Shown: positions 10,154 through 52,941, numbered from the stretch's first letter. The stretch: DNA of 57,288 bases from Vitrella brassicaformis CCMP3155 (GCA_001179505.1 CDMY01000528.1:1-57288), one strand, 5' to 3'. Program-made: numbers and translations. The notes: generated by a model not told the origin, from the sequence alone.

Positions 10154-11904
10154 ATGGACAGTAGCCACGACGCCCCGGCTCCCTCGAGACGTGGGCGCCA
10201 AGAAGAGACCGACAGCAACAAACAGCATCGCGAAGCGGTGCGCACAAGTCCACACCCACACCCACACAGACACACAAACTCATTGATGTGTGTCGCTGGT
10301 CAGGTGCCTGATGATGACGGCGGCGCCAAGAAGCGTAGACGCGTAGACATCGGCCCTGCAGCTGGTGGTGGTGGTGCTGGTGGACACAGTGGAGGTACGC
10401 AAAGCATCGGCTGCTGTTGGTGGACTGCACATCGTCATGACCCTCCTGTGCTGTGTGTTGTGGTGCCTTCAGGTGGCTCGGTTGGTGCGGGTGGTGCTGC
10501 GGCAGAGTCACAGCAGCAACAGGGAGGTGCCATCTCACTGTCGGCAGATCTGACGGCCCCCATGCAGCACCCCAACCAGCAGCAGCAGCAGCAGCACCCC
10601 GTGTGGTACGTCTGCGCCCACCGCGGCAGCGATTTTCCGCTGCGGGATGTGCTGCATCTGAGGAAGACCTGCAAATGGGCCAGCGGCCTCTTCGGAGCGC
10701 CTCAGCTGCGGCAGCTGCTCAGCCAATGGACAACTGACGATGAACTCAGCACACAGGCGGGGCTGCGACGGACGGCCAACGGACAGCAGCTGCTGACATT
10801 CGACGACCAGCAGATGGGCGAGGGTGACCTGCTGGCAGCGCTGTGTGTGGCGGAGGCGGGCGGCTGGAGTGAGATGAGCGAGGCGGTCGAGCTGGCGGGG
10901 CAGTGCGGCAACTGCCAGCTGCCTGTGAGGCTCACTGCGGCCGATCTGCACCAATACCCAAACAAGACGGTAAGCCAACCGAGTGAGGGAGGGAGGAAGG
11001 GAGGGAGAGAGGGAGGGAGGATGGCTTTCAATCGGTGTGTGGTGTGTTGATGTGTTGTGTGTGCAGGCGTATTTGGCCGCTCCCCGTGTGTTGGCTCAGC
11101 TCAAGATGGTCGGCCCCCACATCCACTTCGGCGACAACACGACCTTTGAGCTCTTCCGCTACGGCAACACACTGCGGGCCATCAAGAACCAGGCCGCCTA
11201 CGAGATGGACATCAACCCGCCCCTCCCTGCCAACCACCTCTACCAACAGCACCGACAGCAGCACGACCCGCCAGTCCGCAGCCGCATCGGATATGCCCCG
11301 TCTGCGGGCTGGGTGGTGGCCGTGACTCCTTACAACTACTCATCTGTGTCGTCGTTTGTCAAGAGCATCGTCATCGACCACTTCGCGGGCACTCACCAGA
11401 TCAACACCACTGCCCGTACAATGGACAGGTCAGGCAGGGCATCACTCTGTTTGGCCATTGCCACGTCACATACGAGTGTGTGTACGTTGTGTGTGTGTGT
11501 GTGTCAGGCATGTCGACAACAACCAGCTGCACACCCTCATGACGCAGTCCCCCCACACACCAGTGGAGGGGTGCACCACGACCACATCATTCCGCCTCAC
11601 TGACTTTTTCGCTTACCGTCGTCTCGTCCTGACGGGCACCGGCCGCTCGTTCGTCGCATGGATCACCGTCGAGCTCCACCAACATCGGTCAGCCCAGCTC
11701 GGCACAGCGAGGGGGAGGGAATGCGGTGTCACTCTTATCTCTGTCCTCTGCTGTCATTTGGTTGCAGTGAGTGTTAAGGTCTTCACCACCGAGTCGGCTG
11801 TGTCTGGTGTGGGCGGCGCCTTCAAGGACCGCTTCCCAGTGACTTATCGGCTGGCGCGTGCGGTGCTGGGGACCGTCATCTCAGCCAGGATCTTCGGCCA
11901 ATAG
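10154..11904 (+). CDS. F-box-like lineage-specific family, copy A (in frame only if the last 80-nt intron is retained)
   Basis: Exons MDSSHDAPAP..|VPDDDGGAKKRRR..|GGSVG..HPVWYVCAHRGSDFPLRDVLHLRKTCKW..YPNKT|AYLAAPRVLAQLKMVGPH..|HVDNNQLHTL..|..FKDRFP..RIFGQ*; strongly similar to five other copies in the window. Confidence 0.7.
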
Positions 11905-13035
11905 CCAGCTGAGGTATGTGTGCATCAAACACGACTGAGACGAGCAGGTGATGCCGACACGACGTACCCAATGGTGTGCCTTCTATCATTCGGTGTGTGT
12001 CAGGCCGGGCGGCGGTGCTGATATTGGAGCGATCCGCCCGACATATTCTCTCTCGCCAGTGTGGGTTACCGGTAGATAGAGGCGGGCGGGCGGGGACTTC
12101 CTCTCGAGCCGTGTGGTCGTGTGGTGCCATGGTGTTGGGTGATGGATAGCTGGATGGCTCGATGGAATGCCTCTTCCTCTCCTCATGACACGTAAAGCTG
12201 TCAATCGTTTCCTTACACCTCTCTGCCCGTCCGTCTGTCTGTCTGTCTATCTCGCTCGGCCCTTTCTCTCTGTCGTGCTGCTGTCCCCTCCCCTCCGCTC
12301 CCCTCTCCCACTGCTCCCCCTCATGTGCAGTGGCCGACCAGACCGGTGAGGTGTGTGTGGGTCGGAGAGAGAGGACAGACAGACAGCACCAGAGGGGAGA
12401 TGGGCATACACAGCAAGGCACACACACGGTGGCCTGATTGAAGTTAAAGGGCGGTAGGTGCTGATGCCCTCGGCGAGCCCAAAGGCAGGCAGACAGACAG
12501 ACAGCCAGACAGCCAGATGGAATGATGAACGTGTTTAGTTGCATTGAGTGAGAGGAACGGTGTGCGTTTGATGGACGGCCGTATGGGGGATGTGTGTGTT
12601 CGTATGGCTGAATGCCTGGCTTTGCAATGCAACGAGTGAATAGTCTTACCTAATCTGATCGCATCCATCCGAAGCGCACCAAACATACGGTGTCTGTACC
12701 ATTACACGGGTCTCCATCTGTCTGTCTGTCTGTCTCTCGACGCCGCTGGGTGGCGGGCGGACAGGGAGCAGCACAACGTCAATCCATTCGCAGGCACGAT
12801 CTATGCACACACACACACATCACATACAAGGGGAACACCCACCACACCCACATCTGTCTGTCTGTCTGTCTGCCCCTCTCTCTGCCAGCTGCTTACTGAC
12901 TGTACAAGACACATAAAGCGAACAGCCGGCATGCAGACAGACGGGGAGGCAGGCAGGCAGGCAGGCAGGCAGGCCAGAGTGCACGCCAGCCACTAGCTAA
13001 GCTAACTAACGAGCTACGAGCGGGCAGCGAGAGCA

Positions 13036-14012
13036 TCAGAGCTCCTCAAAGATCGACCCAAACACGCCCGCGAAGGGGTCCACGTGCGGCTGTTGTCCCC
13101 TGTCCTCTGCAACCGCCGTCTTGTCGCTCCCTGCCACTGCCTGGTGCTCCTTGTTGTGCGCCTCCTCGGTGATGTACTCCTGCCCGTCGCTGGTCTTGCG
13201 CGTGGTCTTGGTCTTGACCGTGCCATTCGGCTCGGTCCACTTCTCTGTCACGATGGTCTCCTGCTTGCCGTTGACATTGCGGTGCGCCACGCTCTTGCTG
13301 TATCCCTTCTGGCTGGAAAACGACCCCCCGGAAGACGACGAGAATGACGAGAACGATGAGCTGCTCGAGCTGGAGAAAGACGTTGAGAAAGACGCCGACC
13401 CGCCCCCTCCCCCGCCACCGAATGCCGCGAAGGGGTCGGCATCGAACCCTTTGAACATGTCCTCAAATCCCTTGAAGAAGTCTTTGAACATCTCGTCGGC
13501 CTGGGCGAAGCTGAAGTGGTGCGCAGCGCCGAAGTCAAAGCCGCCAGCACCGCCAGCGAGGGAGGCGTCGTACTGTTTCCGCTTGTCGGGGTTGCTGAGG
13601 GTCTCGTATGCCTCGGCTATGCGGATAAACCGCTCCTCGGCCTCCTTCTTGTCACCTGCAGTGCAGCCACACAGCCGGCCACCGGTGACGTAATGGGCGG
13701 TAAGATATCTTCTCGCCAGGTGCGCAAGCGCTGACCTTGGTATTTGTCAGGGTGGTACTGCACGGCCATCTTGCGATACGCTTTCTTGATCTCGTCGTCT
13801 GTGGCCTTCTGCTCGACTCCCAACACGTCGTAGTAGGTCTCCTTCTCCTCGCCCGCCAGCGCCTGCGGACACACACATCACATCACACACAAAGAGATCG
13901 GGTCGTTCTCATTCATCGGCTGGCTGGAGGTGGGAGATGCGCTGACCAGGAAGGCACAGACGCCCAGCAAGATGCCGAGGAGCAGACGGAGATGCGATGC
14001 TGGAAACGCCAT
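13036..14012 (-). CDS. DnaJ/Hsp40 (J-domain + G/F-rich + Ser-rich), signal peptide, ends FEEL; probable ER-luminal J-protein
   Basis: [22 protein letters not shown]|ALA then YYDVLGV...[15 protein letters not shown]...[24 protein letters not shown] (HPD motif); G/F and poly-Ser region; C-terminal GSIFEEL*. Confidence 0.92.
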
Positions 14013-16703: not shown

Positions 16704-18462
16704 CTATTGGCCGAAGACCATGGCTGAGATGATGTCCCCCAGCACCACACGCGCCAGCTGAGTGGTCTGCGGGAAGCGGTCCTTGAAGGCGCCACCCACA
16801 CCAGACACAGCCGACTCGGTCGTCCTGACGAACACACGCACTGCAAATGGATGACAAGAGAGGACAGAGATGAGAGTGAGTGCTGTATGTGTGGTGTATA
16901 GGCTTGTAAGCCCTGCCCCTCGCTGTGTCATGCTGGGCGCACCATTATTGTGATAGACCAGATCCTTGACGGTGATCCACGCGACGAAGGGGTGGCTGGC
17001 GTCGGTGAACACGAAATGACGACAAGTGCCAGTGCCACTGAAGCGGTCTGATGCGGTTGTGGTGCATCCCGCCACTGGTGTGTGGGGTGACTGTGTCAGC
17101 AGAGTGTCCAGCCGGTTGTTGGCAACACGCCTGACACCCACAACCCCCCCCCCCCACACACACTCATAACACACTTTCCTGTGTCGTGGCAACGCCCGCA
17201 TAGAGTGATGCCCTGCCTGACCTGTCGATGAGGATGTTCGGTCTGTTGATCTGGTGAATCGTCGCGAAGTGGTCGATGACGATCCTCTTGACACACGACG
17301 ACACTGACGAGTAGACCCAATCAAAGCGCAACGGCCGCCAGCCCTCGGGCGACAACGGCCGATAGTCGATCCTGCTGCGGACGGGCGGGTCGTGCGGCTG
17401 TCGGTGTTGCTGATAGGGGTGGTTGGGAGGGAGGGGCGGGTCGATGTCGATCTCGAAGCCGTCCTGGTCCTTGATGGCCATCAGTGTGTTGTCGTGCTGG
17501 AACAGCTGGAAGGTCACGCCGTCGCCGAAGTCGATGTGGGGGCCGACCATCTTGAGCTGAGCCAACACACGGGGAGCGGCCAAATACGCCTGCACACACA
17601 ACACATCAACACACCACACACCGATTGACAGCCATCCCTTCTCCCTCCCTCCCTCCCTCCCTCCCTCGGTTGGCTTACCGTCTTGTTTGGGTATTGGTGC
17701 AAATCAGCGGCCGTGAGCCTCACAGGCAGCTGGCAGTTGCCGCACTGCGCCGCCAGCTCGACCGCCTCGCAGATCTCACTCCAGCCGCCCGCCTCCGTGA
17801 CACACAGTGCCGCCAGCAGGTCACCCTTGCCCATCTGCTGGTCGTCGAATGTCAGCAGCTGCTGTTCGTTGGCCGTCCGCCGCAGCCCCGCCTGTGTGCC
17901 GAGCTCATGGCTGAGCCGCTGCCGCAGCTGAGGCGCTCCGAAGAGGCCTCTTGCCCTACTGCAGGTCTCCCTCAGACGCAGCACATCCCGCAGCAGAAAA
18001 TCGCTGCCGCGGTGGGCGCAGACGTACCACACGGGGTGCTGCTGCTGCTGCTGCTGGTTGGAGTGCTGCATGGGGGCCGTCAGATCTGCCGACAGTGAGA
18101 TGGCACCTCCCTGTTGCTGCTGTGACTCTGCCGCAGCACCACCCGCACCAACCGAGCCACCTGAAGGCACCACACAGCACAGGAGGGTCATGACGATGTG
18201 CAGTCCACCAACAGCAGGGGATGCTTTGCGTACCTCCGCTATGTCCACCAGCAGCAGCAGCAGTATGGCTGATGTCTACGCGTCTACGCTTCTTGGCGCC
18301 GCCGTCATCATCAGGCACCTGACCAGCGACACACATCAATGAGTTTGTGTGTCTGTGTGGTTGTGGACTCGTCCGCACCGCTTCGCTATGCTGTTTGTTG
18401 CTGTCGGTCTCTTCTTGGCGCCCGCCTCTCGAGGGAGCCGGGGCGTCGTGGCTACTGTCCAT
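16704..18462 (-). CDS. F-box-like family, copy B (apparently intact)
   Basis: Same exon structure as copy A; no stop or frameshift found across ORFs 17956-18504, 17514-18248, 17164-17619, 16704-17324; ends AMVFGQ*. Confidence 0.8.
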
Positions 18463-30080: not shown

Positions 30081-31545
30081 CCAGCGTGAGTCCGCACCGC
30101 ACGATCGAACAGGCAACATTTACTTGAGGAGAGAGAGGCCATGGGTGCATGGCATGGATGTGCGTATGCACATTATACAAGTGTGTGTGTGCAGACATAC
30201 AAATAAGTATAGAAGACATACAGAGATCGACAGACAGACAAGGCAGCAGAGATGGATGGACCACAGGCGCATGTGAATCTCACCCCACCCACCTCATGCG
30301 GCAACCATCACACACAACACCACCGAGACGCCACATGTACCCGCACAGCCTCAGCAAGGAGGACTGGACCGCATCGCCACACTGTCCATTCGCATGGCAA
30401 TGAGAGCGGTCAGCAAAACGCCTCGGCGACCGACTGCGATGCATGGGGTCACACAAAGACAATATGGAGTCAGGACCACACACAGAGAGAGAGGAAGGTA
30501 AGCCCACCCACCAGCCACCCACACACATCAATCAACCGCCGTACACCCACAAGGAGGCAAAAATGACCGACTGCATGGGAACAGCCGGTAAGTCTATGTC
30601 TGTCTGTTGTGATGTGTGCATGTGGATGGGCAACGGGTGTGAAACATACCGCCGTGTCTGTATGTGTGGATGCGTGTGTAGAGCAACGAATTCGCCACTG
30701 TGGACACAGACACAGAGAGAGAGGGAGAGAGACAGGGGAGAGAGGTCAGTGATCAGCCACAACGTGCAGCAAAGACCAACAGACCACCGACCGCCCAGCC
30801 GTTCGGTGCATTCAGTCGGTCAGTCAGGCAGATGTCTGCTCCAGCGTGAGTCCGCACCGCACGATCAAACAGGCAACATACTTAATGAGAGAGAGGCCAT
30901 GGGTGCATGGCATGGATGTGCGGATGTACATTATACAGGTATGCACATGTATACTTGATGTATGTGTATAAGGGTGTGTACAGAAGACATACAAATGTGT
31001 ACAGACATACAAAGAGAGAGAGAGGGGGATGGGGAGCCGACGCGAGGGGAGGAAGCAGACATGGATCAAGGGCACATGCATCCCACCCACCCCATACAGC
31101 ATCCGCACTGCATCACAGCATGAGTAAGATCTAGAAGGATTGGAGCACATCGCTCCAGTACGTACGTATGCATTGCATGCATATCACAGCATACAGCAGA
31201 AAGGCGCCTCGTATGGAGGCCTCCAGGGACCGCACACGACACGAAATCAGTAAGCACATGTAGACAGACACACAGAAAGTAAGCCCTCCCGCCCGCCCAC
31301 CAACCCACCCACGAAGCAGGCAAAAACTGATCATGACTGACTGCACAAGGGCAGTCTGTCTGTCTGTCTGTCCGGTGCGATGATATGTGTGTGGGTGGGC
31401 AACGAGTGTGAAACGAAGTACACATTGTACCGCCACAGTGTGTGTGTTTACGTATGTGTGCAGGCAGCAACAAATTCGTCACGGAGGGATGCGTGGATGG
31501 GTGAACACACATGGTGGGTGATCGGTTGGTCTGCCTCTCTCTCTG
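30081..31545. repeat. Two tandem copies (~30081-30840, ~30841-31545) of the non-coding module found downstream of family copies
   Basis: CCAGCGTGAGTCCGCACCGCACGATC(G/A)AACAGGCAACAT...GCCATGGGTGCATGGCATGGATGTG starts both copies; GAATTCG(C/T)CAC recurs at ~30689 and ~31472. Confidence 0.8.
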
Positions 31546-31763
31546 TGCTGATACATGTCTGTCCACACCCCCGCTGCCCTCATCATCATCATCATCATCT
31601 TCATCGTTCTCGAAGTCGTCCTCCACATCGTCCTCCATATCATCGCCATCGCCATCGAAATCTGCATCACACATAGGAGGATAGAGAAGGGCGTCAACCA
31701 GCCACCTAGTGCGTGCCTCCCTGCTCGTGTCAGTCGTGTTTGATGCAGTCATACCTCAGCTGT

Positions 31764-32996
31764 CTATCGGTCGAAGAACATGGCTGAGATGACGGTCCCC
31801 AGCACCGCCCGCGCCAGCCGAGTGGTCTGCGGGAAGCGGTCCTTGAAGGCGCCACCCACACCACACACAGCCGACTCGCTGCAGATCCATGATGGTGATC
31901 CACGCGACGAATGAGTGGCTGGTGTCCGTCAGGACGAGACGGCCACAAAAGCCGTCAAAAGTTGAGCGTGATGCAGTGGTGGTGCATCCCGCCACTCGTG
32001 TGTGGGAGGACTGCGTCAGCAGGTTGAGCAGCCGGTTGTTGGCGACATGCCTGACACACACATATTATACAGAAATAACACTCGCGTGACGTGGCAATGC
32101 CCTCTCAAAGTGATGCCCCGCCTGACCTGTCGATGAAAGTGTGAGTGGAGTTGATCTGGTGAGTGCCAAAGAAGTGCCGGAGGACGATGCTCTTGACACA
32201 CAAGGACACGGACGAGGAACTCTAAGTTTCCCCAGTCATCGACCGCCAGCCCAGGAACCGATCATAGTCGATGCTGCTGCGGACGGGCGGGTCATGCTGC
32301 TGTCGGTGCTGCTGGTAGGGGTGGTTGAGAGGGAGGGGCGGGTCGATATCGAGCTCGAAGCCGTCCTCGTCCTTGATGGCCCGCAGTGTGTCGCCGTGTT
32401 GGAACAGCTGGAAGGTTACGCCGTTGCCGAAGTCGATGTGGGGGCCGACCATCTTAAGCTGAGCCAACACACGGGGAGCGGCCAAATACGCCTGCACACA
32501 TAGCACATCACACACAGAGAGAGAAGAATGAACAAGACCCTCTCTCTCCCCTCCCGCCCCTGTGTATGCGTCTCACCGTTTTGTTGGCGTGTCTGTTGAT
32601 GTCGTCAGCAGTCAGCCGCACCGGCAGGGTGCACCGGCCGCACTGCTCCGCCAGCCGCAGTACGTCGGCGACCTCGTCCCACCTCTGCTCCTCCACCATC
32701 CAGATGGCCGGCAGCACCACACGTGGCTCAGACACCGTCTGGGCGTCGAAGACCAGCACGGTGTCGAGCCGTGACCCGTCGGCGAGCCGTTTGCTGTGCA
32801 GCGAGTGGGTGAGTCGTTTGCGGAGTGCATCGGGAGGGAAGTCGACGATGCTGTGCTGGCGGGTTGCCACTCTGAGGCTGCCGACGTCTTTGATCTTGAG
32901 CAGCCAAACTCGCGAGTGGCGGAAGATGCAGGGGACCGCCTCGCCGTTGACGACCGGCGAGTCCGTGTCGCTGCTCCTGCTGCTGATGGCTGACAT
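31764..32996 (-). pseudogene. F-box-like family, copy C (divergent N-terminus; premature TAG plus deletion/frameshift)
   Basis: Core AYLAAPRVLAQLKMVGPH exon present; in-frame TAG at 32222-32224 where paralogues have Tyr; the last intron and flanks are deleted near ~31883, shifting the frame. Confidence 0.8.
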
Positions 32997-33548: not shown

Positions 33549-33848
33549 NNNNNNNNNNNNNNNNNNNNNNNNNNNNNNNNNNNNNNNNNNNNNNNNNNNN
33601 NNNNNNNNNNNNNNNNNNNNNNNNNNNNNNNNNNNNNNNNNNNNNNNNNNNNNNNNNNNNNNNNNNNNNNNNNNNNNNNNNNNNNNNNNNNNNNNNNNNN
33701 NNNNNNNNNNNNNNNNNNNNNNNNNNNNNNNNNNNNNNNNNNNNNNNNNNNNNNNNNNNNNNNNNNNNNNNNNNNNNNNNNNNNNNNNNNNNNNNNNNNN
33801 NNNNNNNNNNNNNNNNNNNNNNNNNNNNNNNNNNNNNNNNNNNNNNNN
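33549..33848. other. Assembly gap (300 N)
   Basis: Run of N. Confidence 1.
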
Positions 33849-34189: not shown

Positions 34190-34905
34190 GGATGTGAGTA
34201 TGTCCATTATATATCTATGTGAGTCAGTGTATATGCACACGTCTGTGTACACCGATACAGAGGTGTGTACAGAAGACATACAAATGGGTACAGACATGCA
34301 GACAGAGAGAGAGATGGATGGAGGAGGCGACGTGAGGCAAGGCAGCAGACAATACGGACCAAGCGCACATCACATGCATCGGATCCCGCCTGCAGCCAGC
34401 TGTCCCTCCACCATTCACCACATGTCATGTGTCCGCACAGCATCAGTAGGCAGGATTGATCGGAGCACATCGCTCCAGTATGGATGCATTGCGTGTACAT
34501 GAAAGCATTCATTCACGAAGAACGCCTCGGCGATCGAGTGGCATTCGTGAAGTCACACACAATCATGATGAATTCAGGACGACACTCAGACAGTGAGAGA
34601 GGAAGGCAAGCCGCCTCCCCACCAGCAACCAGCCACACACATCAATCGCCGAGGACCAACAAGCAGAGAGAAACGACTGACTGCATGGGAGCAGCCTGTC
34701 TGTCTGTCTGTCTGTCTGGTGTGGTGACATGTGCGTGGGTGTGTGGGTGGGCAACGAGTGTGAGATGAAATACACACCGCACCGCCACAGTCTATGTGTA
34801 TACGTATGTGTGCATCCCATGCAGCAACGAATTCGTCACGGAGGGGTGGCTGGACACATAAAGTTCATCGTGCATCCATCGGTCGGCCGGCCTGTCTGTC
34901 TGTCT
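34190..34905. repeat. Downstream non-coding module, copy behind family member D
   Basis: Shares CAACGAATTCGTCACGGAGG..GGCTGGACACATAAAGTTC..GTGCATCCATCGGTCGGCC with 44375-44440 and other blocks with 30900-31500. Confidence 0.75.
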
Positions 34906-34985
34906 GTCTGTCTGCTTTTGAGCAAATGCCAGTCCGCACGCCCCCCCGTGACGTACACACACCCATCCATCCATCGCGAGGCAGC

Positions 34986-36721
34986 CTAGCCCACAGACGC
35001 CGATGCAGATGCAGACGCCGCCGCGGCCTCGCCACCTGCTGAGATTGCATCAATCAGGTGGCACAAACAGGCAGACACACGTGACGTGCCCCCCTTCTTT
35101 TGCTGCGTACCTCTGCTGCCCTCTCCGCTGCTGCCGTCATCATCAGAGTCCTCCCAGTCGTCCTCCATATCGTCATCATCGCCATCGAAATCTGCATTAC
35201 ACACACGGACGATAGAGAAGGGGTCATGCATCCATCCATTCATCTGTGTCTGCTTCCGTACCGTCGTTATCGTCCAGATCGTCGCTATCGGAATCTGCAC
35301 CGCACGCCAACAGCAGTGAAGACAATCCATCCATCCATCCATGGGCGTCCCTTCTCGTGTGTCCTGTGTCCGTACCTTCGTCACTGTCGTCCTCCGGCTG
35401 CTGTCCCGGTTTCGGTGCGCCGTCAAACAGGATGGCTGAGATGATGTCACCCAGCACCACACGCGCCAGCTGAGTGGTCTGCGGGAAGCGGTCCTTGAAG
35501 GCGCTACCCACACCAGACACAGCCGACTCAGTCGTAATGACCCACACACGCACTGCAAACGAATGACAGCAGAGGACAGAGATGAGAGTGGCACTGCATT
35601 CCCTCCCCCCTTGCTGTGCCGTGCTGGGCTGACCAATGTTGGCGACATCCGTGACGGCAATCCACGCGACGAACGATTGGCAGGCGTCGGTCAGCACAAG
35701 AGAACGACGGAGGCCGACATAGGGGAGGTACGATGTTGTTGTGGTGCATCCCTCACTGGTGTGTGGGGGGACTGTGTCACGATGGTGTGCAGCCGGTGGT
35801 TGTCAACATGCCTGACACACACAATACATAACGTACACTCGTGTGTCGTGACAGTGCCCACACAGAGTGATGCCCCGTCTGACCTGTCGATGAAACTTGT
35901 AGTGTAGTTGATCTGGTGAGTGCCCTCGAAGTGGCCGAGGACGATGCTCTTGACGAACGACGACATAGATGAGGAGACCCGAGCGCACATCGGCATCTAG
36001 CCCTGGGGCAGCCGATATGTGGCGCTGCGGACGGGCGGGTCATGTGGCTGTCGGTGCTGCTGGTAGAGGTGGTTGGGAGGGAGGGGCGGGTCGATGGTCA
36101 GCTCGAAGCCGAACTGGTCCTTGATGGCCCGCAGTGTGTCGCCGTGGTGAAACAGCTTGAAGGTCACGCCGTTGCCGAAGTGGATGTGAAGGTCGACCAT
36201 CTTGAGCTGAGCCAGCACACGGGGAGCGGCCGAATACGCCTGCACACACAACACACCACACACCGATTGAGAGCCATCCTCCCTCCCTCCCTCCCTCCCT
36301 CCCTCGGTTGGCTTACCGTCTTGTTTGGGTATTGGTGCAGATCGGCTGCAGTGAGCCTCACAGGCAGCTGGCAGTTGCCGCACTGCCCCGCCAGCTCGAC
36401 CGCCTCGCTCATCTCACTCCAGCCGCCCGCCTCCGTCACACACAGCGCCGCCAGCACGTCACCCACACCCATCTGCTGGTCATCGAAGGTCAGCAGCTGC
36501 TGTCCGTTGGCCGCCCGCCGCAGCCCCGCCTGAGTGCTGAGGGAATGTCCGAGCCGCTGCCGCAGCTGAGGCGCTTTGAAGAGCTCTCTGAGCCAGCGGC
36601 ATGTGGCCCTCAGCTGCAGGACATCATCGAGGCTGAGAAGGAAGAAGCTGCGGCGGCCGACGAAGATGTACTCGATGGGGTGCTGCTGCTGGTTGGGCTG
36701 CTGTTCTTGTGTGTCCTGCAT
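34986..36721 (-). pseudogene. F-box-like family, copy D with acidic C-terminal mini-exons; premature TAG and -1 frameshift
   Basis: MQDTQEQQPNQQQHPIEYIFVGRRSFFLLSLDDVLQLRATCRWLRELF; TAG at 35997-35999 (GGC TAG where paralogues have GGC TGG); -1 deletion at ~35750-35759; tail exons EDDSDEG|DSDSDDLDDND|DFDGDDDDMEDDW|..SVG*. Confidence 0.8.
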
Positions 36722-40232: not shown

Positions 40233-41542
40233 CTATTGGCCAAAGATCCTGGCTGAGATGATGGGCCCCAGCACCGCCCGCGCCAGCCGAGTGGTCTGCG
40301 GGAAGCAGTCCTTGAAGGCACCACCCACACCAGACACAGCCGATTCGGTGGTATTGACGTGGACATCCACTGCAAATGAAGGACAGGGGAGGACAGAGAG
40401 ATGAGACTGAGTGCTTATGTATGACGCATGGGTTTGTCACCCTCCTCCCCCTCGCTATGCCGTGGTGGGCTGACCGTCATTATACGAGTTCTCCGACATG
40501 TAGATCCATGCCACGAATGAGTGGCCGGCGTCGGTCAGGACGAGACGACGAGAAGTCAAGCCACCGGCAGTGGAGCAGAATGATGTGGTGGTGGTGCATC
40601 CCTCTACTGGTCTGTGTGAGGACTGTCAGCAGGTTGAACAGCCGGTTGTTGTTAACAAGCCTGACACACACACAATACACACACACACTCGTGTGTCCTG
40701 GCAGTGCCCACACACATTGATGCCCCGCTTGACCTGTTGATAGCACGGAAAGTGCCGTTGGTTTGGTGAGTCCTCTCGAAGTGGCTGAGGATGGCCCTCT
40801 TGATAGACGACGACACAGATGAGTAGTCCCAAGCGCCCAGCGACACCCAGCCCGTAGGCGGGAGGTATCCGATCCTGCTGCGCACGGGCGGGTCATCTGA
40901 CTGTCGGTGCTGCTGGTAGGGGTGGTTGGCCAGGAGAGGCGGGTCGATGGTCAGCTCGAAGCCGTCCTGATCCTTGATGGCTCGCAGTGTGTCGCTGTGT
41001 TGGAACAGCTGGAAGGTCACGCCGTTGCCGAAGTCGATGTGAGGGCCGACCATCTTGAGCTGAGCCAACACACGGGGAGCGACCGAATACGCCTGCACAC
41101 ACAACACATCAACACACCACACACCGATTGAGAGCCATCCTCCCTCCCTCCGTCCCTCGGTTGGCTTACCGTCTTGTTTGGGTATTGGTGCAGATCGCCC
41201 GCAGTGAGCCTCACAGGCAGCTGACAGTTGCCGCACTGCCCCGCCAGCTCGACCGCCTCGCTCATCTCACTCCAGCCGCCCGCCTCCGTCACACATAGCG
41301 CTGCCAGCAGGTCACCCTTGCCCATCTGCTGGTCGTCGAATGTCAGCAGCTGCTGTCCGTTGGCCGTCCGCCGCAGCCCCGCCTGTGCGCTGAGCTCATC
41401 GTCTGTTGTCCAGTGGGTGAGCCGCTGCCGCAGCTGAGGCGCTTCGAAGAGGCCTCTCGCCCAGCTGCAGGTTTCCCTCAGACACAGCACATTCCGCAGC
41501 GGAAAATCGCTGCCGCGGTGGGCGAGGACGTACCACACGGGG

Positions 41543-43764: not shown

Positions 43765-44128
43765 AGAGAGGGGGGCCATGGCCATGGCCATGGGTGCATG
43801 CCATGGCATGGATGTGTGTATGCACATTGTATGAGTGTGTGTGTACAGACATACAAATAAGTATATAAGACATACAGAGATCTACAGGCAGACAAGGCAG
43901 CAGAGACGGATGGACCACAGGCACGCGTGAATCCCACCCCACCCACCTCATGCGGCAGCCATCACACCGCCACCGAGACACCACATGTACCCGCACAGCA
44001 TCAGCAAGGAGGATTGAACCGCATCGCCACAGTGTCCATTCGTATGGTAGTGAGAGCGGTCAGCAAAAACACCTCGGCGACCCGGTGGAATGCATCGGGT
44101 CACACACAAACAACATGATGTCAAGACG

Positions 44129-44161
<33 letters not shown>

Positions 44162-44455
44162 CAGGAAGGGATCCCCGCCCGCTCACCAGCCCATCACCAC
44201 CCACACACATCAATCGGAACCAACAAGAAGGCAAAAACGACTGACTGCATGGGAACATCCGGTCTGTCTGTCTGTCTGCTGTGATGACATGTGTGTGGGT
44301 GTGAGTGGGCAACGAGTATGAAATGAAATGCACACTGCACCGCCGCAGTCTATGTGTGTATTTATGTATGCCTGCAGCAACGAATTCGTCACGGAGGGAT
44401 GGCTGGACACATAAAGTTCGTGGTGCATCCATCGGTCGGCCTGTCTGTCTGTCTG
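43765..44455. repeat. Downstream non-coding module, copy behind family member F
   Basis: Near-identical to 30135-30600 (GCATGGATGTG..CAGACATACAAATAAGTATA..CCCACCTCATGCGGCA..TGAGAGCGGTCAGCAAAA). Confidence 0.8.
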
Positions 44456-44469
44456 TCTGCCCTTGAGAA

Positions 44470-45810
44470 AATGCCATGCGCCATCAAACAGGATGGCTGA
44501 GATGGGGCCCCCCAGCACCGCCCGCGTCAGCTGAGTGGTCTCCGAGAAGCGGTCCTTAAAGGCGCCGCCCACACCACACACAGCCGCCTCGGTGGTCCAG
44601 ACCGACACACCCACTGCAAACGAATCACGGGGGAGGACAGAGATGAGAGTGACACCGCATTCCCTCCCCCTCGCTGTGCCGAGCTGGGCTGACCGTTGAA
44701 GCCCAGCTGGACGGTGATGCACGCGACGAACGATTGGCAGGCGTCGGTCAGCACAAGAGAACGACGGAGGCCGACATGGGGGAGGTACGATGTTGTTGTA
44801 GTGCATCCCTCACTGGTGTGTGGGGGGACTGTGTCACGATGGTGTGCAGCCGGTGGTTGTCAACATGCCTGACACACACAATACACAACGTACACTTGTG
44901 TGTCGTGACAGTGCCCACACAAAGTGATGCCCCGCCTGACCTGTCGATGAAACTTGCAGTGTAGTTGATCTGGTGAGTGTCCCTGAAGTGGTCGATGACG
45001 ATGCTCTTGACGAACGACGACACAGATGAGTAGTCCCGAGCCAACAGGGTCAGCAACCGCCAGCCCTCGGGCGGATGATAGTCGATGCTGCTGCGGACGG
45101 GCGGGCGGGTCGTGCTGCTGTCGGTGCTGCTGGTAGGGGTGGTTGGGAGGGAGGGGCGGGTCGATGTCGACCTCAAAGCCGTCGTCGTCGTTGACGGCCC
45201 GCAGTCTGTTGCCGTGGTGGAACAGCTGGAAGGTTACGCCGTTGCCGAAGTCGATGTGGGGGCCGACCATCTTGAGCTGAGCCAACACACGGGGAGCGGC
45301 CAAATACGCCTGCACACACAGCACATCAACACACCACACACCCATTGAGAGCCATCTATTGTCCCTCCCTCCCTCCCTCGGTTGGCTTACCGTTTTGTTT
45401 GGGTATTGGTGCAGATCGGCCGCAGTGAGCCTCACAGGCAGCTGGCAGTTGCCGCACTGCCCCGCCAGCTCGACCGCCTCGCTCATCTCACTCCAGCCGC
45501 CCGCCTCCGTCACACACAGCGCCGCCAGCAGGTCACCCTCGCCCATCTGCTGGTCGTCGAATGTCAGCAGCTGCTGTCCGTTGGCCGCCCGCCGCAGCCC
45601 CGCCTGTGTGCTGACTTCATGGGTGAGCCGCTGCCGCAGCTGAGGCGCTCCGAAGAGCTTTCTGAGCCAGCTGCAGGTCTTCCTCAGCCTCAGGATGTCA
45701 TCGAGACTGAGGAGGTAGAATGTGCGGCGGCCGACGAAGATGTACTCGACGGGGTGCTGCTGCTGCTGGTTGGGCTGCTGCTGGTTGGGCTGCTGCTGGT
45801 TGGGCTGCAT
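44470..45810 (-). pseudogene. F-box-like family, copy F; 4-nt duplication frameshift and -1 frameshift shared with D
   Basis: MQPNQQQPNQQQPNQQQQHPVEYIFVGRRTFYLLSLDDILRLRKTCSWLRKLF; coding strand GACCCGCCCGCCCGTCCGC at ~45100 (extra GCCC); CCAGTGAGGGATGC at ~44807-44816 as in D; 3' end abuts the non-coding module. Confidence 0.8.
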
Positions 45811-45924: not shown

Positions 45925-48775
45925 ATGCACCTACTGATAGCGCGAGGCCTCATCCTTCAAGCATCTTTACCGGTGCTCTCACACGGGGCTGTCCATGCTC
46001 ACGCTCACGGCCTTCGAGCTCTTGCGTTTTTCGCGCGATGCCGGGTGCTCAAGAAGAAGATCAAACCGCACACGAGGGACACTCAGAAAGGAAGATCTTG
46101 CAGACAGAGGTGAGGTTGGCGGCCTGCAGCCATGATTGATTGATTGATTCATTCACTGGTTGTTTGCTTGCGTTTGCTTGTGTTGTGTGTGCTGTATGTG
46201 TTCATTTGCAGTGCTGTGCGGACAGAGGAGGCGCCATTCCATGCGGGAGAGGTGTGTGTGGGCGCACTGCGGAGGATCTATGACAGGCGAGGCCGGGGCA
46301 ATGCTGAGAACGCAGTCAAGAAGGCGATTGCCCAGCTGGGAGATCATGAGCAGAAGGTGCCTCTGTCTGTCTGGTGACGACGCCTGACTGCATGGCCATC
46401 CACTTGTGTGTGTGTGTGTGTGTGTGTGTGTGTCTGCAGGACCCAGTTTCGCGTGCCTTCGTTGCCGACTCGGTGCTGGGTGTGGTGGTCAGGTGGCTGA
46501 CGCTTCACTTTGTGCTGGTGACGCTGCTCACATCGGTGGCACAAAGCGAAGCGGCGGCAGGTCCGCATGACGCATAAGTAAAAGTAGTGGGGGTGCCGGT
46601 TCTTCTGTAATACATGCAGGTGCATTATCGCGAGAGGGGAATGGCCTGTCTGCAGCCGATGTCGGTGTCCTTAATGGTTTCCAGAGGTATCCACTCGTGT
46701 ACCAGCCACGTACGCGTGCAGGTTGACACACACACACTTCCCTCTGTGTGTGTCAGGCCAGGAGAGGGCAAGGCGTATGAGGGCCTCACAGCAGAGGGGA
46801 GGGACTTCCTGGTCCGTGCTCTGCTGCTCATCTATTGGGACACTTTCATGCCGGCACACCTGCGCGGCTGCTGTGGCCCCAAAAGCAGAGATGGCCAGGT
46901 GCGTCGTGATGCACATTCGCACGCCCCCAGTGTGTGCGCTTTGAGTGCCTGGATCGGTGTACGGTGCGCAGGCGGCCTTCCTCGACGGCAGGAGTGCAGA
47001 GGATGAGTCGAGAAGGGCCCTTGCCGAGGCGATTGTCGATGCGCAACGACAGATGTGCACAGATCAGCTGCTTGCAGGGTTGGCAGTGCACACACGGACT
47101 CTATGTGTCTCTCTATGTATATGTGTGTGTGTTCATGCACACAGGCAGCCTCTGTGGGTACGCAGCAGCCTTCCCGAGTGGCTGGTCAGCAAGTGGGAGT
47201 CCGAGTACGGCACCGAGACGGCCGAGATGGTCGCCATGGCATCCTGCCAGCGGGGCACGACGACACTCAGGCATGTATGTGCTGACGAATGGAATCATAT
47301 GGATCGACTCTGTATCTTGTGCCGTGTGTGGGTGTCTGTGTGGGCGCAGGGTGAACAGTCTCAAGACGACGCGCGAGGCCTTTCTCGCCTCCCTTCGTGA
47401 ACGCAATGTGAACGCCTCGCCGACTAAGACGTCGCCATACGGCGTCACGCTCGAGGTGCCGCACACACATCCATACCATATAGAAACGTGGATCTCTCTC
47501 CCTCTGTCTGTCTGCAGGCAAGGCGGCCGCGTGGCGTGTCATTGCGTGAGCTGGGCGGCTGGCACTCGGGCGATTTCGAATTGCAGGTGCGTCGACTCGA
47601 CGCACCGACCACCGTGCCTCCATCTATCTAGACAGATGTGTGTGTGTCAGGATGAGGGCTCCCAGCTGATTGCGTGTGCGTGTCGACAGCTGGACGGCCC
47701 GCAGGCGGCCACCAGTCCACTAATCATCGACCTGTGTGCAGGTAGGGATGGATGGAGGGATGGACATCCACTCGTACGGTACCTGTGTGTGTGTTGTCCT
47801 GGTGCGATGAGAGCAGGAAGGGGCGGGAAGACGCTCGCCTTGGCGGCCATGTACCCGTCCGGGAGGATCTACGCATACGACACCGACCACACACGACTCG
47901 ATGACATAGAGGTCTAACACATGATTATACCGATCCATCCGACAGACCGAACAATCGGTGTCTGTCTCTCTTTGTGTCAACCTTGGGTGTGCACAACCCT
48001 ACAGTGGCGGCTGCCGCGGTCGCACGCCAGCTCGTGTGTGTCAGTGGTGAGAGATGGGCAGCAACTGGCGGCTCTGAAGGTGCGCAAGGCAATAAAGGCC
48101 ACACAGTCAGCGAACCGGTATGTGAATCCTGTGTGTGTGATGTGAATGACGTGTGAAGGGCAAGGCCGACATTGTGTTGGTGGACGCTCCCTGCTCGTCA
48201 CTCGGGGCCCTCAGAAGACACCCAGGGTGCATACCTCCCGCCGCACTGAGAAAAGCCACGCCATCCATCCATCCATCCTGCGCTCTTCTCGTGCATTGAA
48301 TGCAGTCTTCGGTGGCAGCTCAACCAGACGGAGACCACACTGCCGGCACTGCAGACGGCCATTTTGCGTAAGTAAGAGTGAATGGAATGGCCACACACAC
48401 AAACCCATGTGAGCATCCATTTTGTTCATTCAGTTGGCGCCCGTGATTATGTGCGTCCGGGCGGCCTGCTGGTGTACGCCACCTGCGCCCTCTCCCGGCA
48501 CGAGAACGACCACGTGGCTGCCGTGATGGACCGACAGAGCGGCTTTGCCCCCTGCCCATGCCCACTGCTGACCAGTAAACAGGCAGTAATACACTGCGAT
48601 GGATCACGTATGGATGTCGGTGTGTTTGTGTGCAGGTGCAATTAATGCTGGCGAGTTGTGTGGGGAGGTGGGTCGGTCGGGCCACTGCACGCTCTTCCCC
48701 AGCGGCGGTGGTGGCACCGATGGGTTCTTTGTGGCGAGATGGACGAGGGAGGACACTGGAGTGGCAGAGATGTGA
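45925..48775 (+). CDS. rsmB: RsmB/Sun (NOL1/NOP2/Sun family) RNA m5C methyltransferase with N-terminal extension
   Basis: Spliced motifs SLPEWLVSKW, TLR|VNSLK, ELQ|DEGSQL, IIDLCA..GGKT, YAYD, DIVLVDAPCS (motif IV), LLVYATCA (motif VI), TDGFFVARW; both catalytic-type Cys present. Confidence 0.88.
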
Positions 48776-50821: not shown

Positions 50822-52941
50822 ATGGGCGACAAGGTGGGTGGCTGATGGCGGCTCTCATTTCAGTGTGATCATGCCGTTCTTGTGTGCGTGCAGGGGTATT
50901 TCACCGAGCAGGACGCCTACCACATTTTCCGGGACGTCTTTCTCCGACGGCGTGACTATGGGGGAGCGGACCCCTTCGAGGGCATAAGCCTGCAGAGGCA
51001 CGTCGGGGCGCTTCGCAACGGGTCAGTGAGGGTCACTTCACTGTGGGCGTGTGGAGGTGCACACCGACGGACACACCGCACGCGCGTCTTCATCGTTGTG
51101 TGTGTGTGTGTGTGTGCAGTTTCTTGACGAACAAGCTGTACAGGAAGGAGCTCGAGAAGATCAGCCTGTTTGAGGATCCCACGGCGTTGCGCCCGCCACC
51201 CCCCCGTCCGAAGTCACCAGGATCCCGGTCATCATCCCCACCAGCAGCAGCTCCGACGCCGACAACACCGCCCACTCTACCTCTGCCCACAAGGGTATGT
51301 ATGTGTGTATGTCCGTGGCCACAGCCGACGAGCCATTCATTTCCCCAGTCAGTCTGCAGCCTCTCCTGTGTGTGTCGTGTGTATCACATCAGAGTGGTGA
51401 CGGTCGCCGTCGCCAACGCCATCACCCCGGCGATGAGCCGCTGGACTTCTCTTCGTTGCCCGAGCTGGAGGACAAAGGCAGCGACATCGACGAGGAGAAG
51501 GACCAAGGTGAGAGAGTGAGGGAAGGAAGAAAGAGTGTGTTGGGGGTGTGTGGACGGACATTCCTCCGTTCATTCGGTGATGGGTGTGTGTGTGTTCCGG
51601 CCTGCCTGTGGCTGTCACGTCAGGCTGCCTCTCCCCATCTGGACACCGAGACTCGTCGGCAACAAACACGACGCGGGCGTCGACAAGCGAGAGCGACAAC
51701 TCACCCACGGCGCCCAACGTACCTATGCAACCCCACACCAACAGACAGAGAGGCGCACCCACACGCACGAAGCGCGGCGCTTCCTTTGTTTGTTCCCCTT
51801 TCCCTCAGGCCGACCGGTCGCCGCCCACACTGCCCTCGCCGGTTAAGGTGAGTGAGAAGGAGAGTTTCCGTGTGCTTGGGGGTGCTATGTGTGCACGTGT
51901 GGCGTGTGTGTGTGTGTGTGTGTGGTTCTTGTGCAGACACAAGAGGCTGCTCGCTCGGCTGATCGGAAGACCTCTTCGCGCAGCCCAAACACCGATGTGA
52001 GCCGAGTGCATGTGTGTGGGTGGGTGGGGGCGAGTGACCGTGCTGTTTGGCCGTCCACTGTGTGTGTGCGCGTCGCGTCTTCGTGTGTGTGTGCAGGCCG
52101 TGGTGCGCGAGATGGAGAACACCTACGAAAACACCTACATTCTCAAGTGGGAGCAGGGCAGTCCCAAGCGCGTCGAGGTCGCCGGTAAGCGCATTTACCC
52201 CCCCCCCCCNNNNNNNNNNNNNNNNNNNNNNNNNNNNNNNNNNNNNNNNNNNNNNNNNNNNNNNNNNNNNNNNNNNNNNNNNNNNNNNNNNNNNNNNNNN
52301 NNNNNNNNNNNNNNNNNNNNNNNNNNNNNNNNNNNNNNNNNNNNNNNNNNNNNNNNNNNNNNNNNNNNNNNNNNNNNNNNNNNNNNNNNNNNNNNNNNNN
52401 NNNNNNNNNNNNNNNNNNNNNNNNNNNNNNNNNNNNNNNNNNNNNNNNNNNNNNNNNNNNNNNNNNNNNNNNNNNNNNNNNNNNNNNNNNNNNNNNNNNN
52501 NNNNNNNNNACACACACCGACATACACACACGCATTCAGCTGCACGTCTATGGCTGGATCGATCAGGCTCATTCACAGAGCCGCCGTGGGTGAGAAGGAT
52601 GCCGCTCGCATACTGCCCACGGTCAGTCAATGAGTGAGTGAGAAGGAATGAGCCATCAAAAACATGGGTCTGCACACCTGTTTGTGTGTGTGTGCATGGA
52701 CTTGCAGAACGTCCACCTACTGGATCTCGCTACAAGAAGCCGTCCCGGAGCTGCGGCCCGGTACCTGCTCACACACACGTGAAAATGTCCGACGAGCAAC
52801 GTGGGTGTGTGTGTGCGCGTCCGTGTGTGGGCCATCAACATGTGAGCAGGGTCATATCAGTTCAAGTATGTCGTCGACGGCGAGTGGAAATGCGACATGT
52901 CGCTGCCCACACAAGACGTAAGTGCCGTCATGCAACACACA

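What the first reader, a model, noticed from the sequence alone, without database searches (positions are those of the whole stretch)
11275..11345. CDR-like hypervariable loop framed by invariant anchors in all six copies
Seen: between HDPPVRS and YSS(V)SS the copies read A RIGYAPSAGWVVAVTPYN, B RIDYRPLSPEGWRPLRFDWV, C SIDYDRFLGWRSMTGET, D ATYRLPQG*MPMCARV, E RIGYLPPTGWVSLGAWD, F SIDYHPPEGWRLLTLLARD. Length and sequence vary around a fixed GW, while flanks are highly conserved. A second variable patch follows GCTTT (A TSFRLTDFFAY, B ASDRFSGTGTC, C ASRSTFDGFCG, D/F TSYLP(Y/H)VGLR). Inference: these are surface loops under diversifying selection that set ligand specificity, analogous to antigen-receptor CDRs.
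Basis: partly seen in the sequence, partly recalled or inferred. Interest (0 to 1): 0.75.

Follow-up and report, generated by a model that had tools for sequence, protein, structure and literature searches.

The report
Hypervariable recognition patches, Vitrella gene family
The variable stretch is real: it is one of six fast-changing patches on a previously undescribed protein domain of a gene family with hundreds of copies, found only in the alga Vitrella. At these patches amino-acid-changing mutations are fixed about twice as fast as silent ones, the pattern expected of a surface that recognises changing targets.

Summary
The window is Vitrella brassicaformis CCMP3155 scaffold DNA. However, five of the six window copies are broken (A, C, D, E, F); only copy B (public protein P0010, 447 aa) is intact.

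The loop lies in exon 2 of a four-part conserved gene. That gene has at least 151 scored matches (331 candidates) in the genome. No relative was found outside Vitrella, no Pfam family matches, and no solved fold matches clearly.

The loop is one of six hypervariable segments, not two. It is more variable than introns: pi is 0.28-0.42, against 0.09-0.25 for introns.

In a non-circular test, the 35 most variable sites were chosen in 41 distant paralogues. In 21 independent intact copies those sites give omega 2.07, against 0.43 for the rest (LRT versus omega = 1, p = 3e-8). Loop lengths change almost only in multiples of three.

A confident AlphaFold model places the patches on hairpin tips, alternate strand residues and one helix face.

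The head shows only a weak F-box-like signal. Contiguity of the patches in 3D and any ligand remain untested.

The scan had already noted this family on other DNA of the same genome (s1-201670, s1-209537 and others).

The parts
10154..11904 (+). Copy A gene. Exons: 10154-10237, 10304-10394, 10473-10969, 11067-11428, 11508-11687, and 11768 onward. It is disabled: exon 3 is 180 nt, so exon 4 is read out of frame and the public model P0001 ends ...HQHREC at 11777. The family reading frame would run to the TAG at 11902-11904.
11262..11282 (+). 5' anchor HDPPVRS of copy A. It is conserved at protein level, with purifying selection on neighbouring codons.
11283..11336 (+). Length varies in steps of three nucleotides.
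11337..11354 (+). 3' anchor YSSVSS of copy A, which runs into the start of helix 313-328 (P0010 numbering).
11355..11390 (+). Helix with one hypervariable face. The variable codons are 11355, 11364, 11376, 11385 and 11388, which correspond to P0010 residues 316, 319, 323, 326 and 327.
11400..11420 (+). Hypervariable segment at the end of exon 2 (I-N-x-T-x-R-x), a strand with alternating variable residues.
11590..11622 (+). It is the distal half and turn of the hairpin formed by P0010 residues 364-383. It includes the strongest single site, the codon matching H378 of P0010.
11665..11687 (+). Hypervariable segment at the end of exon 3 (after FVAWI). It has alternating strand residues followed by a length-variable turn.
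11770..11784 (+). Hypervariable segment at the start of exon 4 (x-V-x-V-x before TTE). It contains no indels and shows strict alternation between hypervariable residues and conserved Val.
16704..18462 (-). Copy B, the only intact copy in the window (public protein P0010, 447 aa). Exon 2 is 17222-17589, the loop 17314-17373, exon 3 16943-17130 and exon 4 16704-16840.
32219..32275 (-). Copy C loop. An in-frame stop follows GET. This copy also lacks the end of exon 3, intron 3 and the start of exon 4.
35976..36023 (-). Copy D loop. The W of the G-W motif is a stop codon, and the public model P0016 ends there.
40826..40876 (-). Copy E loop, which is itself open. The gene is broken by a 2-nt deletion in exon 3 (P0006 is frameshifted).
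45033..45089 (-). Copy F loop. A 4-nt insertion in the HDPP anchor shifts the frame (P0012). The loop DNA is 89% identical to that of a paralogue on another scaffold (C437:56135-56225) but only 64% identical to its closest overall relative, copy D.

Best explanation
The stretch is one of six hypervariable segments in the C-terminal alpha+beta domain of a Vitrella-only multigene family. The family has hundreds of loci, and about 60% of the sampled copies are open.

Each protein has three parts:
- a low-complexity N-terminus with a KKRRR basic cluster;
- a strongly conserved helical 'constant' region that begins with a weak F-box-like motif;
- a C-terminal domain of a hairpin, a helix and a beta-alpha-beta4-alpha unit.

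The hairpin tips, every second residue of three strands, and one face of a helix differ in nearly every paralogue.

Shown: these sites fix amino-acid changes about twice as fast as silent changes. Loop length changes stay in frame. Segments are exchanged between paralogues, so each gene carries its own combination.

Inferred: the variable sites form the target-binding surface, and the constant part docks each variant onto a shared partner. If the F-box-like motif is real, that partner is most likely an SCF-type ubiquitin ligase. On this reading the family is a germline repertoire of adaptors with different specificities, evolving by birth-and-death, segment exchange and diversifying selection.
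For: - Organism and family. There are 151 scored matches and 331 candidates. All named relatives are from Vitrella.
- Real coding genes: transcript contigs are spliced at the same three introns, and MMETSP transcripts exist. Exon 2 length is 2 mod 3 in 47 of 49 copies despite ranging from 341 to 389 nt.
- Hypervariability above neutral markers.
- Selection: a tree-based count gives N/S ratios of 1.24-1.65 in the patches against 0.39-0.91 elsewhere. In the site test, 11 of 50 patch codons against 5 of 171 framework codons show beta > alpha (Fisher p = 5e-5). Cross-validated omega is 2.07 against 0.43, LRT p = 3e-8.
- Structure: the AlphaFold model has pTM 0.73, with residues 130-447 mostly above pLDDT 90. 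Variability alternates in strands and is one-sided on the helix. Variable columns are enriched in R, S, Y, D, E, N and W.
- Segment exchange.
- F-box-like head: hhalign probability 49%, E = 1.7e-4, at the expected position. Three of 28 members give weak Pfam hits.
Against: - Averaged over whole contiguous patches, ML omega is only 1.03. The case for omega above 1 therefore rests on subsets of sites.
- Recombination among paralogues is evident and can inflate site tests.
- The loops are indel-rich and partly misaligned. For example, F versus L009 is 71% identical in the multiple alignment but 89% by BLAST.
- About 40% of sampled copies, and five of six in the window, are broken.
- The F-box assignment fails Pfam thresholds and no F-box protein appears in the PDB profile search.
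- No binding partner, location or 3D surface map is available.
Confidence: 0.6

Rival explanations
1. Neutral decay. The family is largely pseudogenes, and the loops are simply unconstrained, indel-prone stretches whose apparent hypervariability is inflated by misalignment.
For: Twenty of 49 sampled copies and five of six window copies carry stops or frameshifts. Framework omega is fairly high, at 0.37-0.43. Pooled patch omega is about 1. Misalignment in the loops is documented.
Against: - Omega is 2.07, significantly above 1, at sites chosen in independent paralogues and tested only in intact copies.
- Indel-free positions (x-V-x-V-x and the helix face) show the same hypervariability next to invariant residues.
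- Loop length changes are in frame in 47 of 49 copies.
- Family members are transcribed and spliced.
Confidence: 0.07
2. Mosaic ancestry without positive selection. Gene conversion homogenises the framework, while the patches escape it or are swapped in from old, divergent donors. They therefore look more diverged because they coalesce deeper, not because change is favoured.
For: The 5' framework and intron 1 are far more uniform (K = 0.10) than introns 2 and 3 (K = 0.30). Synonymous divergence is also raised in the patches, with pS 0.31 against 0.12 in close pairs. Clear mosaics exist: copy D resembles F in one block and L014 in the next, and F's loop is closest to a copy on another scaffold.
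Against: Deeper coalescence raises dN and dS together and cannot give omega of about 2. In exon 3, synonymous rates in the patches (8.4-9.8 per site) are close to those of neighbouring framework (7.4-9.2), while nonsynonymous rates are 3-4 times higher. Exchange is more likely a source of variation on which selection acts than an alternative to selection.
Confidence: 0.15
3. The variable residues line a small-molecule pocket or its gate, as in helix-grip or Bet v 1-like binders, rather than a protein-binding surface. The family would then be a set of ligand sensors or carriers.
For: The top Foldseek rows are cytokinin-binding, PYR/PYL and PR-10 proteins. The domain has a long C-terminal helix packed on an antiparallel sheet.
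Against: Those matches are not significant (E of 0.015 or more, TM of 0.31 or less, rmsd 12-15 A). The variable columns are polar or aromatic (R, S, Y, D, E, N) rather than hydrophobic pocket-like. Variable hairpin tips and length changes fit an outer surface better than a cavity.
Confidence: 0.08
4. The exposed face of the beta-sheet binds nucleic acid in the nucleus, in a TBP-like way. The family would then be a repertoire of sequence-specific DNA or RNA binders.
For: There is a KKRRR basic cluster near the N-terminus. The weak structural neighbours share the beta-alpha-beta4-alpha layout of TBP-like domains: adaptin appendage platform, phosphoglucomutase domain 4, and TBP itself at Z = 4.0. 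Arg is the most enriched common residue in the variable columns.
Against: The best Z of 6-7 is at the level the tool reports for models with no true match. Acidic residues are also enriched at variable sites. There is no known DNA-binding motif and no Pfam hit.
Confidence: 0.08

Closest known systems
Expanded F-box adaptor families of nematodes and plants (F-box plus FTH/FBA substrate-binding domain; Thomas 2006, PMC1524861, as summarised in PMC8120010)
   Same: Both have hundreds of clustered, lineage-specific paralogues evolving by birth-and-death with many pseudogenes. Both have a conserved head under purifying selection and a C-terminal recognition domain with positively selected sites. 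Both are intracellular proteins without a signal peptide.
   Different: The head here is only marginally F-box-like: it fails Pfam cut-offs, and hhalign gives 49% probability over 32 of 47 columns. The C-terminal domain matches no FTH, FBA, LRR, WD40 or kelch model, nor any Pfam family. The organism is a chromerid alga, where no such family has been described in the papers I could search.
Antigen-receptor CDRs (immunoglobulin and T-cell receptor variable domains)
   Same: Both have several short, length-variable loops and hairpin tips on a conserved beta framework. Variable positions are enriched in Tyr, Ser, Arg, Trp and Asp, and are framed by near-invariant anchors.
   Different: The fold is not immunoglobulin-like. 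I saw no recombination signals and no evidence of somatic diversification. The diversity is germline, with one variant per paralogue. The proteins appear to be intracellular.
Solvent-exposed beta-strand residues of LRR immune receptors (the xxLxLxx motif of plant NLRs and receptor-like proteins)
   Same: Hypervariable and conserved residues alternate along beta-strands (here x-V-x-V-x). dN/dS is above 1 at the exposed positions. The genes form clusters and exchange sequence between paralogues.
   Different: There is no leucine-rich repeat or solenoid, only a single compact alpha+beta domain. There is no NB-ARC or TIR signalling module.
Variant multigene families of apicomplexan parasites (var, SICAvar, rif and similar)
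   Same: The organisms belong to the same wider lineage (the sister group of Apicomplexa). Both are large families with mosaic exchange between members, and pseudogene copies may act as sequence donors.
   Different: The apicomplexan families encode exported or surface antigens with signal or transmembrane segments, used for immune evasion in a host. The Vitrella proteins lack such signals, and the alga is free-living or coral-associated.
TBP-like / adaptin-appendage platform alpha+beta domains (the nearest solved folds)
   Same: Both have the beta-alpha-beta4-alpha order of elements with an antiparallel meander sheet packed on helices. The appendage platform is a peptide-motif binding module.
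   Different: The similarity is only Z = 6.1-7.1 at rmsd 3.2-3.7 A over about 100 residues, which is the background level for this aligner. Sequence identity is about 10%. There is an extra N-terminal hairpin and helix.

Membership tests
F-box proteins (SCF substrate receptors) | Match to the Pfam F-box (PF00646) or F-box-like (PF12937) model above the curated cut-off | tested here: not met
   Exon pieces of copy A match no family at E up to 1. Only 3 of 28 full-length members match PF12937, with best E = 0.026. A genome-wide PF12937 scan hits no window copy.
F-box proteins (SCF substrate receptors) | Profile-profile alignment to bona fide F-box sequences across the 40-48 residue motif | tested here: inconclusive
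   The family profile was compared by hhalign with 14 Vitrella sequences that do match PF12937. Probability is 49% and E = 1.7e-4. Residues 111-140 of P0010 align to motif columns 14-45, and the first helix (LPxE...) is not matched.
F-box proteins (SCF substrate receptors) | Binding to Skp1 | not testable with these tools
   This needs an interaction assay.
Immunoglobulin-superfamily antigen receptors | Ig-like beta-sandwich V domain | tested here: not met
   No Ig Pfam hit was found. The model is alpha+beta with long helices. No Ig domains appear among the structural neighbours. Two antibody fragments in the PDB profile search have E above 4 and fall on the low-complexity N-terminus.
Immunoglobulin-superfamily antigen receptors | Somatic generation of diversity (V(D)J joining, hypermutation or templated conversion in the soma) | not testable with these tools
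   Only one genome assembly is available, and all the diversity seen lies between germline paralogues.
Bet v 1-like / START helix-grip ligand binders | Significant structural match to the helix-grip fold | tested here: not met
   The best Foldseek E values are 0.015-0.04, with TM of 0.31 or less and rmsd 12-15 A.
TBP-like fold (adaptin appendage platform, PGM domain 4, TBP) | Structural alignment clearly above background (Z well above 8) covering the domain | tested here: inconclusive
   The best Z values are 7.1 and 6.1 over 101-107 residues. The tool states that models with no true match typically reach Z of 7-8.
Gene families under diversifying selection at recognition sites (a general kind) | dN/dS above 1 at a defined subset of sites, exceeding neutral markers, with purifying selection on the framework | tested here: met
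   Cross-validated omega is 2.07 against 0.43, LRT p = 3e-8. Positively selected sites are enriched in the patches, Fisher p = 5e-5. Loop dN of 0.64 exceeds intron K of 0.10-0.31.

The most novel reading that the evidence does not exclude
Vitrella carries an intracellular, germline-encoded variable-receptor repertoire built on a protein domain with no known relatives. Hundreds of adaptors would each have a unique combination of six recognition segments, renewed by diversifying selection and by segment exchange. The many broken copies would serve as a donor archive. The repertoire would be used for surveillance of non-self or selfish targets (viruses, transposons, symbiont or competitor proteins) or for self/non-self or mating recognition. 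This would be an innate-immunity-like system in the closest photosynthetic relatives of apicomplexan parasites.
Probability: 0.25. Interest if true: 0.85.

Novelty: new variant of a known kind. Interest (0 to 1): 0.62.

Why it matters
Large families with conserved scaffolds and positively selected recognition sites are usually signs of molecular arms races. Examples are immune receptors, ubiquitin-ligase adaptors aimed at pathogens, and parasite antigens.

Finding one with hundreds of members on an undescribed domain is notable because Vitrella is a free-living or coral-associated sister of the Apicomplexa. It suggests that the genomic machinery for variant gene families (tandem birth-and-death, mosaic exchange, pseudogene reservoirs) existed before parasitism arose.

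It also gives a concrete, testable set of proteins for asking what such an alga needs to recognise. The 35 sites, the confident model and one intact copy in this window (copy B) make binding and patch-swap experiments straightforward.

Tried and rejected
- Pfam on the exon pieces and on 36 full-length members gave nothing above threshold.
- A profile search of PDB sequences gave nothing.
- Foldseek against PDB with two models gave no hit at E of 0.001 or below.
- The exhaustive VIA-align search gave only background-level Z of 6-7.
- The ESM Atlas gave no usable hit.
- The first AlphaFold run, with 28 close paralogues, was poor (pLDDT 51). It was replaced by a run with 59 sequences.
- Nei-Gojobori ratios of 1.5-2.0 for whole patches are not used as proof. 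A random-codon control gives 1.15 at saturation, and ML with codon frequencies gives 1.03.
- A PHI-like compatibility test for recombination was uninformative (p = 0.54). Nearest-neighbour discordance between segments may reflect weak signal in short segments, so only explicit mosaics are cited.
- Pfam on ten neighbouring ORFs gave one unrelated hit.
- The paper searches found no description of this family.
- The GC dip at 52-54 kb is caused by runs of N.
- I did not search or fold a joined spliced model of my own. Exon pieces were searched by reference. Full-length work used the public annotated proteins returned by the tools. Exon pieces were concatenated only inside scripts, to count frames and stops and to pool codon columns.

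Full report
**Where the window comes from.** The sequence has GT-AG introns and about 59% G+C. Its whole assembly has 72,700,666 bases in 1064 scaffolds. That is exactly the Vitrella brassicaformis CCMP3155 assembly described in PMC4501334. The proteins encoded here are public 'unnamed protein product [Vitrella brassicaformis CCMP3155]' entries.

**The observation.** Copy A is on the + strand (gene 10154-11904). Copies B to F are on the - strand.

The stretch 11275-11345 lies in exon 2 (11067-11428) of copy A. The public gene models and my alignment show that only copy B (P0010, 447 aa; 16704-18462) is intact. The other five are broken as follows:
- A has a one-base frame discrepancy at the end of exon 3. 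Its exon 3 is 180 nt, where intact copies have lengths of 2 mod 3.
- C has a stop after the loop and lacks the exon 3/4 junction.
- D has TAG in place of the W of the G-W motif.
- E has a 2-nt deletion in exon 3.
- F has a 4-nt insertion inside the HDPP anchor.

So 'invariant anchors in all six copies' is approximately right.

**Size and distribution of the family.** The translation of exon 2 matches at least 151 places in the genome at E of 8e-19 or below, out of 331 first-look candidates. The matches are often clustered on the same scaffolds.

A full HMMER scan of 1.84 billion cluster representatives with P0010 finds 104 clusters. The ten I looked up, including the most distant, are all Vitrella or unnamed JGI records.

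A profile search with 59 members finds 127 proteins. Every named one is Vitrella; the rest are JGI or MMETSP transcript records.

No Pfam family matches, and a profile search of PDB sequences finds nothing. I found no paper that describes the family.

**These are genes, not just repeats.** JGI contigs that encode a family member align to scaffold C681 in four blocks at 98-100% identity. Three short gaps sit where introns 1-3 of this family lie, so the contigs are spliced transcripts. MMETSP transcripts also appear among the hits.

Among 49 copies sampled from the genome, 29 are open through exons 2-4. Exon 2 ranges from 341 to 389 nt, yet its length is 2 mod 3 in 47 of 49 copies. The frequent loop indels are therefore almost always in frame.

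**Is the loop hypervariable beyond neutral expectation?** In a DNA alignment of 22 close copies, diversity per 30-nt window is 0.28-0.42 in the loop and 0.04-0.15 in the flanking exon. Intron divergence is K = 0.10 for intron 1 and 0.30 for introns 2 and 3. Loop dN is 0.64.

- the loop (11283-11336);
- one face of the following helix (codons 11355, 11364, 11376, 11385, 11388);
- the end of exon 2 (11400-11420);
- the segment after GCTTT (11590-11622);
- the end of exon 3 (11665-11687);
- the start of exon 4 (11770-11784).

The last of these has no indels and reads x-V-x-V-x. Its entropies are about 3.3 bits at the x positions and below 0.7 bits at the Val positions.

Forty-seven of 49 loop sequences are distinct.

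**Selection.** Simple Nei-Gojobori ratios for whole patches are 1.5-2.0, against 0.3-0.8 for the framework. The same values are obtained from the 17 copies outside the window. I do not rest on these figures, because a random-codon control gives 1.15.

A parsimony count on a 49-copy tree gives N/S rate ratios of 1.24 (loop, p = 0.014), 1.65 (second patch, p = 4e-5) and 1.52 (exon 4 patch, p = 0.008). The framework gives 0.39-0.91.

An ML codon model on 28 intact copies gives omega 1.03 for the contiguous patches, conserved anchors included, and 0.37 for the framework.

I ran my own fixed-effects site test on the same 28 copies. It finds beta > alpha at p < 0.05 for 11 of 50 patch codons but only 5 of 171 framework codons (Fisher p = 5e-5). 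One site survives Bonferroni correction: the codon matching H378 of P0010, p = 6.8e-6. Fifty-seven framework codons are under significant purifying selection.

The cleanest test avoids circularity. I chose the 35 most variable positions in 41 distant family proteins (below 56% identity to P0010). I then estimated omega for those codons in 21 close, intact copies; none of the 41 proteins is encoded by those 21 loci. The result is omega = 2.07, against 0.43 for the other 190 codons. Fixing omega at 1 costs 15.3 log-likelihood units, p = 3e-8.

Caveats: recombination among paralogues can inflate such tests, and the loops are partly misaligned.

**Structure.** With 59 diverse members as the alignment, AlphaFold gives pTM 0.73, with pLDDT mostly above 90 from residue 130 to 447. 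The elements map as follows:
- The loop is a beta-hairpin (strands 287-293 and 301-310) with the G-W in or next to the turn.
- Helix 313-328 follows.
- Then comes a beta-alpha-beta4-alpha unit: strand 335-339, helix 342-352, a meander of strands 364-370, 374-383, 386-396 and 402-409, and helices 421-445.
- The second patch is the tip of the first meander hairpin.
- The exon 3-end and exon 4-start patches are the two strands and the turn of the next hairpin.

In a meander, those two tips lie on the same edge of the sheet. The alternating variable residues of paired strands face the same side. This is an inference from topology.

Variability on helix 313-328 is confined to one face (permutation p = 0.01). 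Variable columns are enriched in Arg, Ser, Tyr, Asp, Glu, Asn and Trp and depleted in Val, Ile and Pro.

The tool returns no coordinates. I therefore could not test whether all six segments form one surface.

Fold searches give no convincing relative. Foldseek's best E is 0.015-0.04, to Bet v 1-like proteins with TM of 0.31 or less. The exhaustive aligner's best Z is 6.1-7.1, to adaptin appendage platform and other TBP-like alpha+beta domains, which is the stated background level.

**The constant part.** Residues of about 130-285 are very conserved, and unusually so at the DNA level. Synonymous divergence is 0.10-0.17 and intron 1 divergence is 0.10, against about 0.3 further 3'. This suggests homogenisation by gene conversion.

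The motif at residues 111-140 resembles helices 2-3 of an F-box. It aligns to a profile of 14 genuine Vitrella F-box-like sequences with hhalign probability 49% and E = 1.7e-4. Pfam itself does not recognise it. I treat the F-box head as plausible but unproven.

There is no signal peptide or membrane segment in P0010. There is a KKRRR cluster near the N-terminus (read by eye).

**How diversity arises.** Besides point changes and in-frame indels, segments move between paralogues:
- Copy D is 94-99% identical to F from the end of exon 2 to mid exon 3. In the exon 3-end patch and intron 3, however, it is 95-96% identical to a copy on scaffold C437 and only 38% (patch) and 89% (intron 3) identical to F.
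- F's loop DNA is 89% identical to another C437 copy but 64% identical to D.
- L003 and L025 are 96-100% identical in the loop, introns and 3' patches, but only 62-69% identical in two other patches.

Copy B's loop has no match better than 78% anywhere in the genome.

**Comparison with known systems.** The closest analogue in logic is the expanded F-box adaptor families of nematodes and plants. These have a conserved head, a positively selected substrate-binding domain and tandem birth-and-death evolution (PMC8120010, citing Thomas 2006, PMC1524861). The difference is that neither domain here belongs to a described family.

The resemblance to CDRs is functional analogy only. The alternating strand pattern recalls the exposed residues of LRR immune receptors.

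I therefore class this as a new variant of a known kind.

**Earlier notes of this scan.** Other agents reached similar readings of the same family on other scaffolds. I consulted those notes only after my own analysis, and I do not count them as evidence.

Noticed in passing
window 10760-11120 (end of exon 1, intron 1, start of exon 2 of copy A) and the same part of the other copies: This block is nearly uniform among 22 paralogues (pi 0.04-0.10; intron 1 K = 0.10, against 0.30 for introns 2 and 3; synonymous divergence 0.10-0.17). Because it includes an intron, this looks like homogenisation by gene conversion rather than protein-level constraint.
   Followed up: partly
window copies A, C, D, E, F (see parts): Five of the six copies are disabled, and several lesions sit in or beside the variable segments: a stop in the loop of C and of D, an insertion at the loop anchor of F, and a frame error in the exon 3-end patch of A. 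The assembly is from short reads, so some lesions may be assembly errors.
   Followed up: partly
window 11403-11411 and the equivalent position in other copies: A conserved N-x-T motif (I-N-x-T) has a hypervariable middle residue. It has the form of an N-glycosylation sequon, although the protein has no signal peptide.
   Followed up: no
window about 10322-10342 (copy A) and about 10560-10600: The low-complexity N-terminal region contains a basic cluster, KKRRR(V/I)D, that looks like a nuclear localisation signal, and a poly-Q run just before the conserved region.
   Followed up: no
proteins P0040, P0156, P0163, P0172, P0177, P0196 (other scaffolds): Six family members carry a Cyclin C-terminal domain (PF02984) in front of the family module. 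One member (P0035) carries RRM domains. These are either alternative 'heads' or fused gene models.
   Followed up: no
window 30137-30644 / 43786-44323, 30973-31497 / 34262-34854, 34426-34931 / 43984-44476: Further repeated blocks (70-80% identity) lie downstream of copies C, D and F and are absent from A, B and E. Copies D and F also diverge from the others after ...SAILFD and continue into an acidic tail.
   Followed up: no
window 11787-11948 versus 31720-31881: The exon 4 body and the first 45 nt after the stop codon are 89-90% identical between A and C (and between C and E), far above the 75-76% seen over the rest of those pairs.
   Followed up: no
window 33549-33848, 52210-52509, 53387-53686: Three runs of 300 N (scaffold gaps). 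The last two cause the apparent G+C dip at 52-54 kb. The first lies just upstream of copy C.
   Followed up: yes
window 13617-13874 (-) and 13036-13491 (-): An ORF with a J-domain-like start (YYDVLGV...YHPDK), followed by a Gly/Ser/Phe-rich ORF, lies between copies A and B. It is probably a DnaJ-type chaperone gene. I read this from the ORF translations only.
   Followed up: no
window 46934-47914 (+): An ORF with a match to the RsmF/B-like methyltransferase ferredoxin-like domain (PF22458, E = 1.2e-6).
   Followed up: no
L069 (ENA metagenome assembly ERZ893790, contig k147_6347326, 5981 bp): An environmental contig encodes a protein (P0017, 180 aa) that is 72% identical to the constant region of copy A. 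Relatives of the family therefore exist in environmental samples, presumably from Vitrella-like algae.
   Followed up: no
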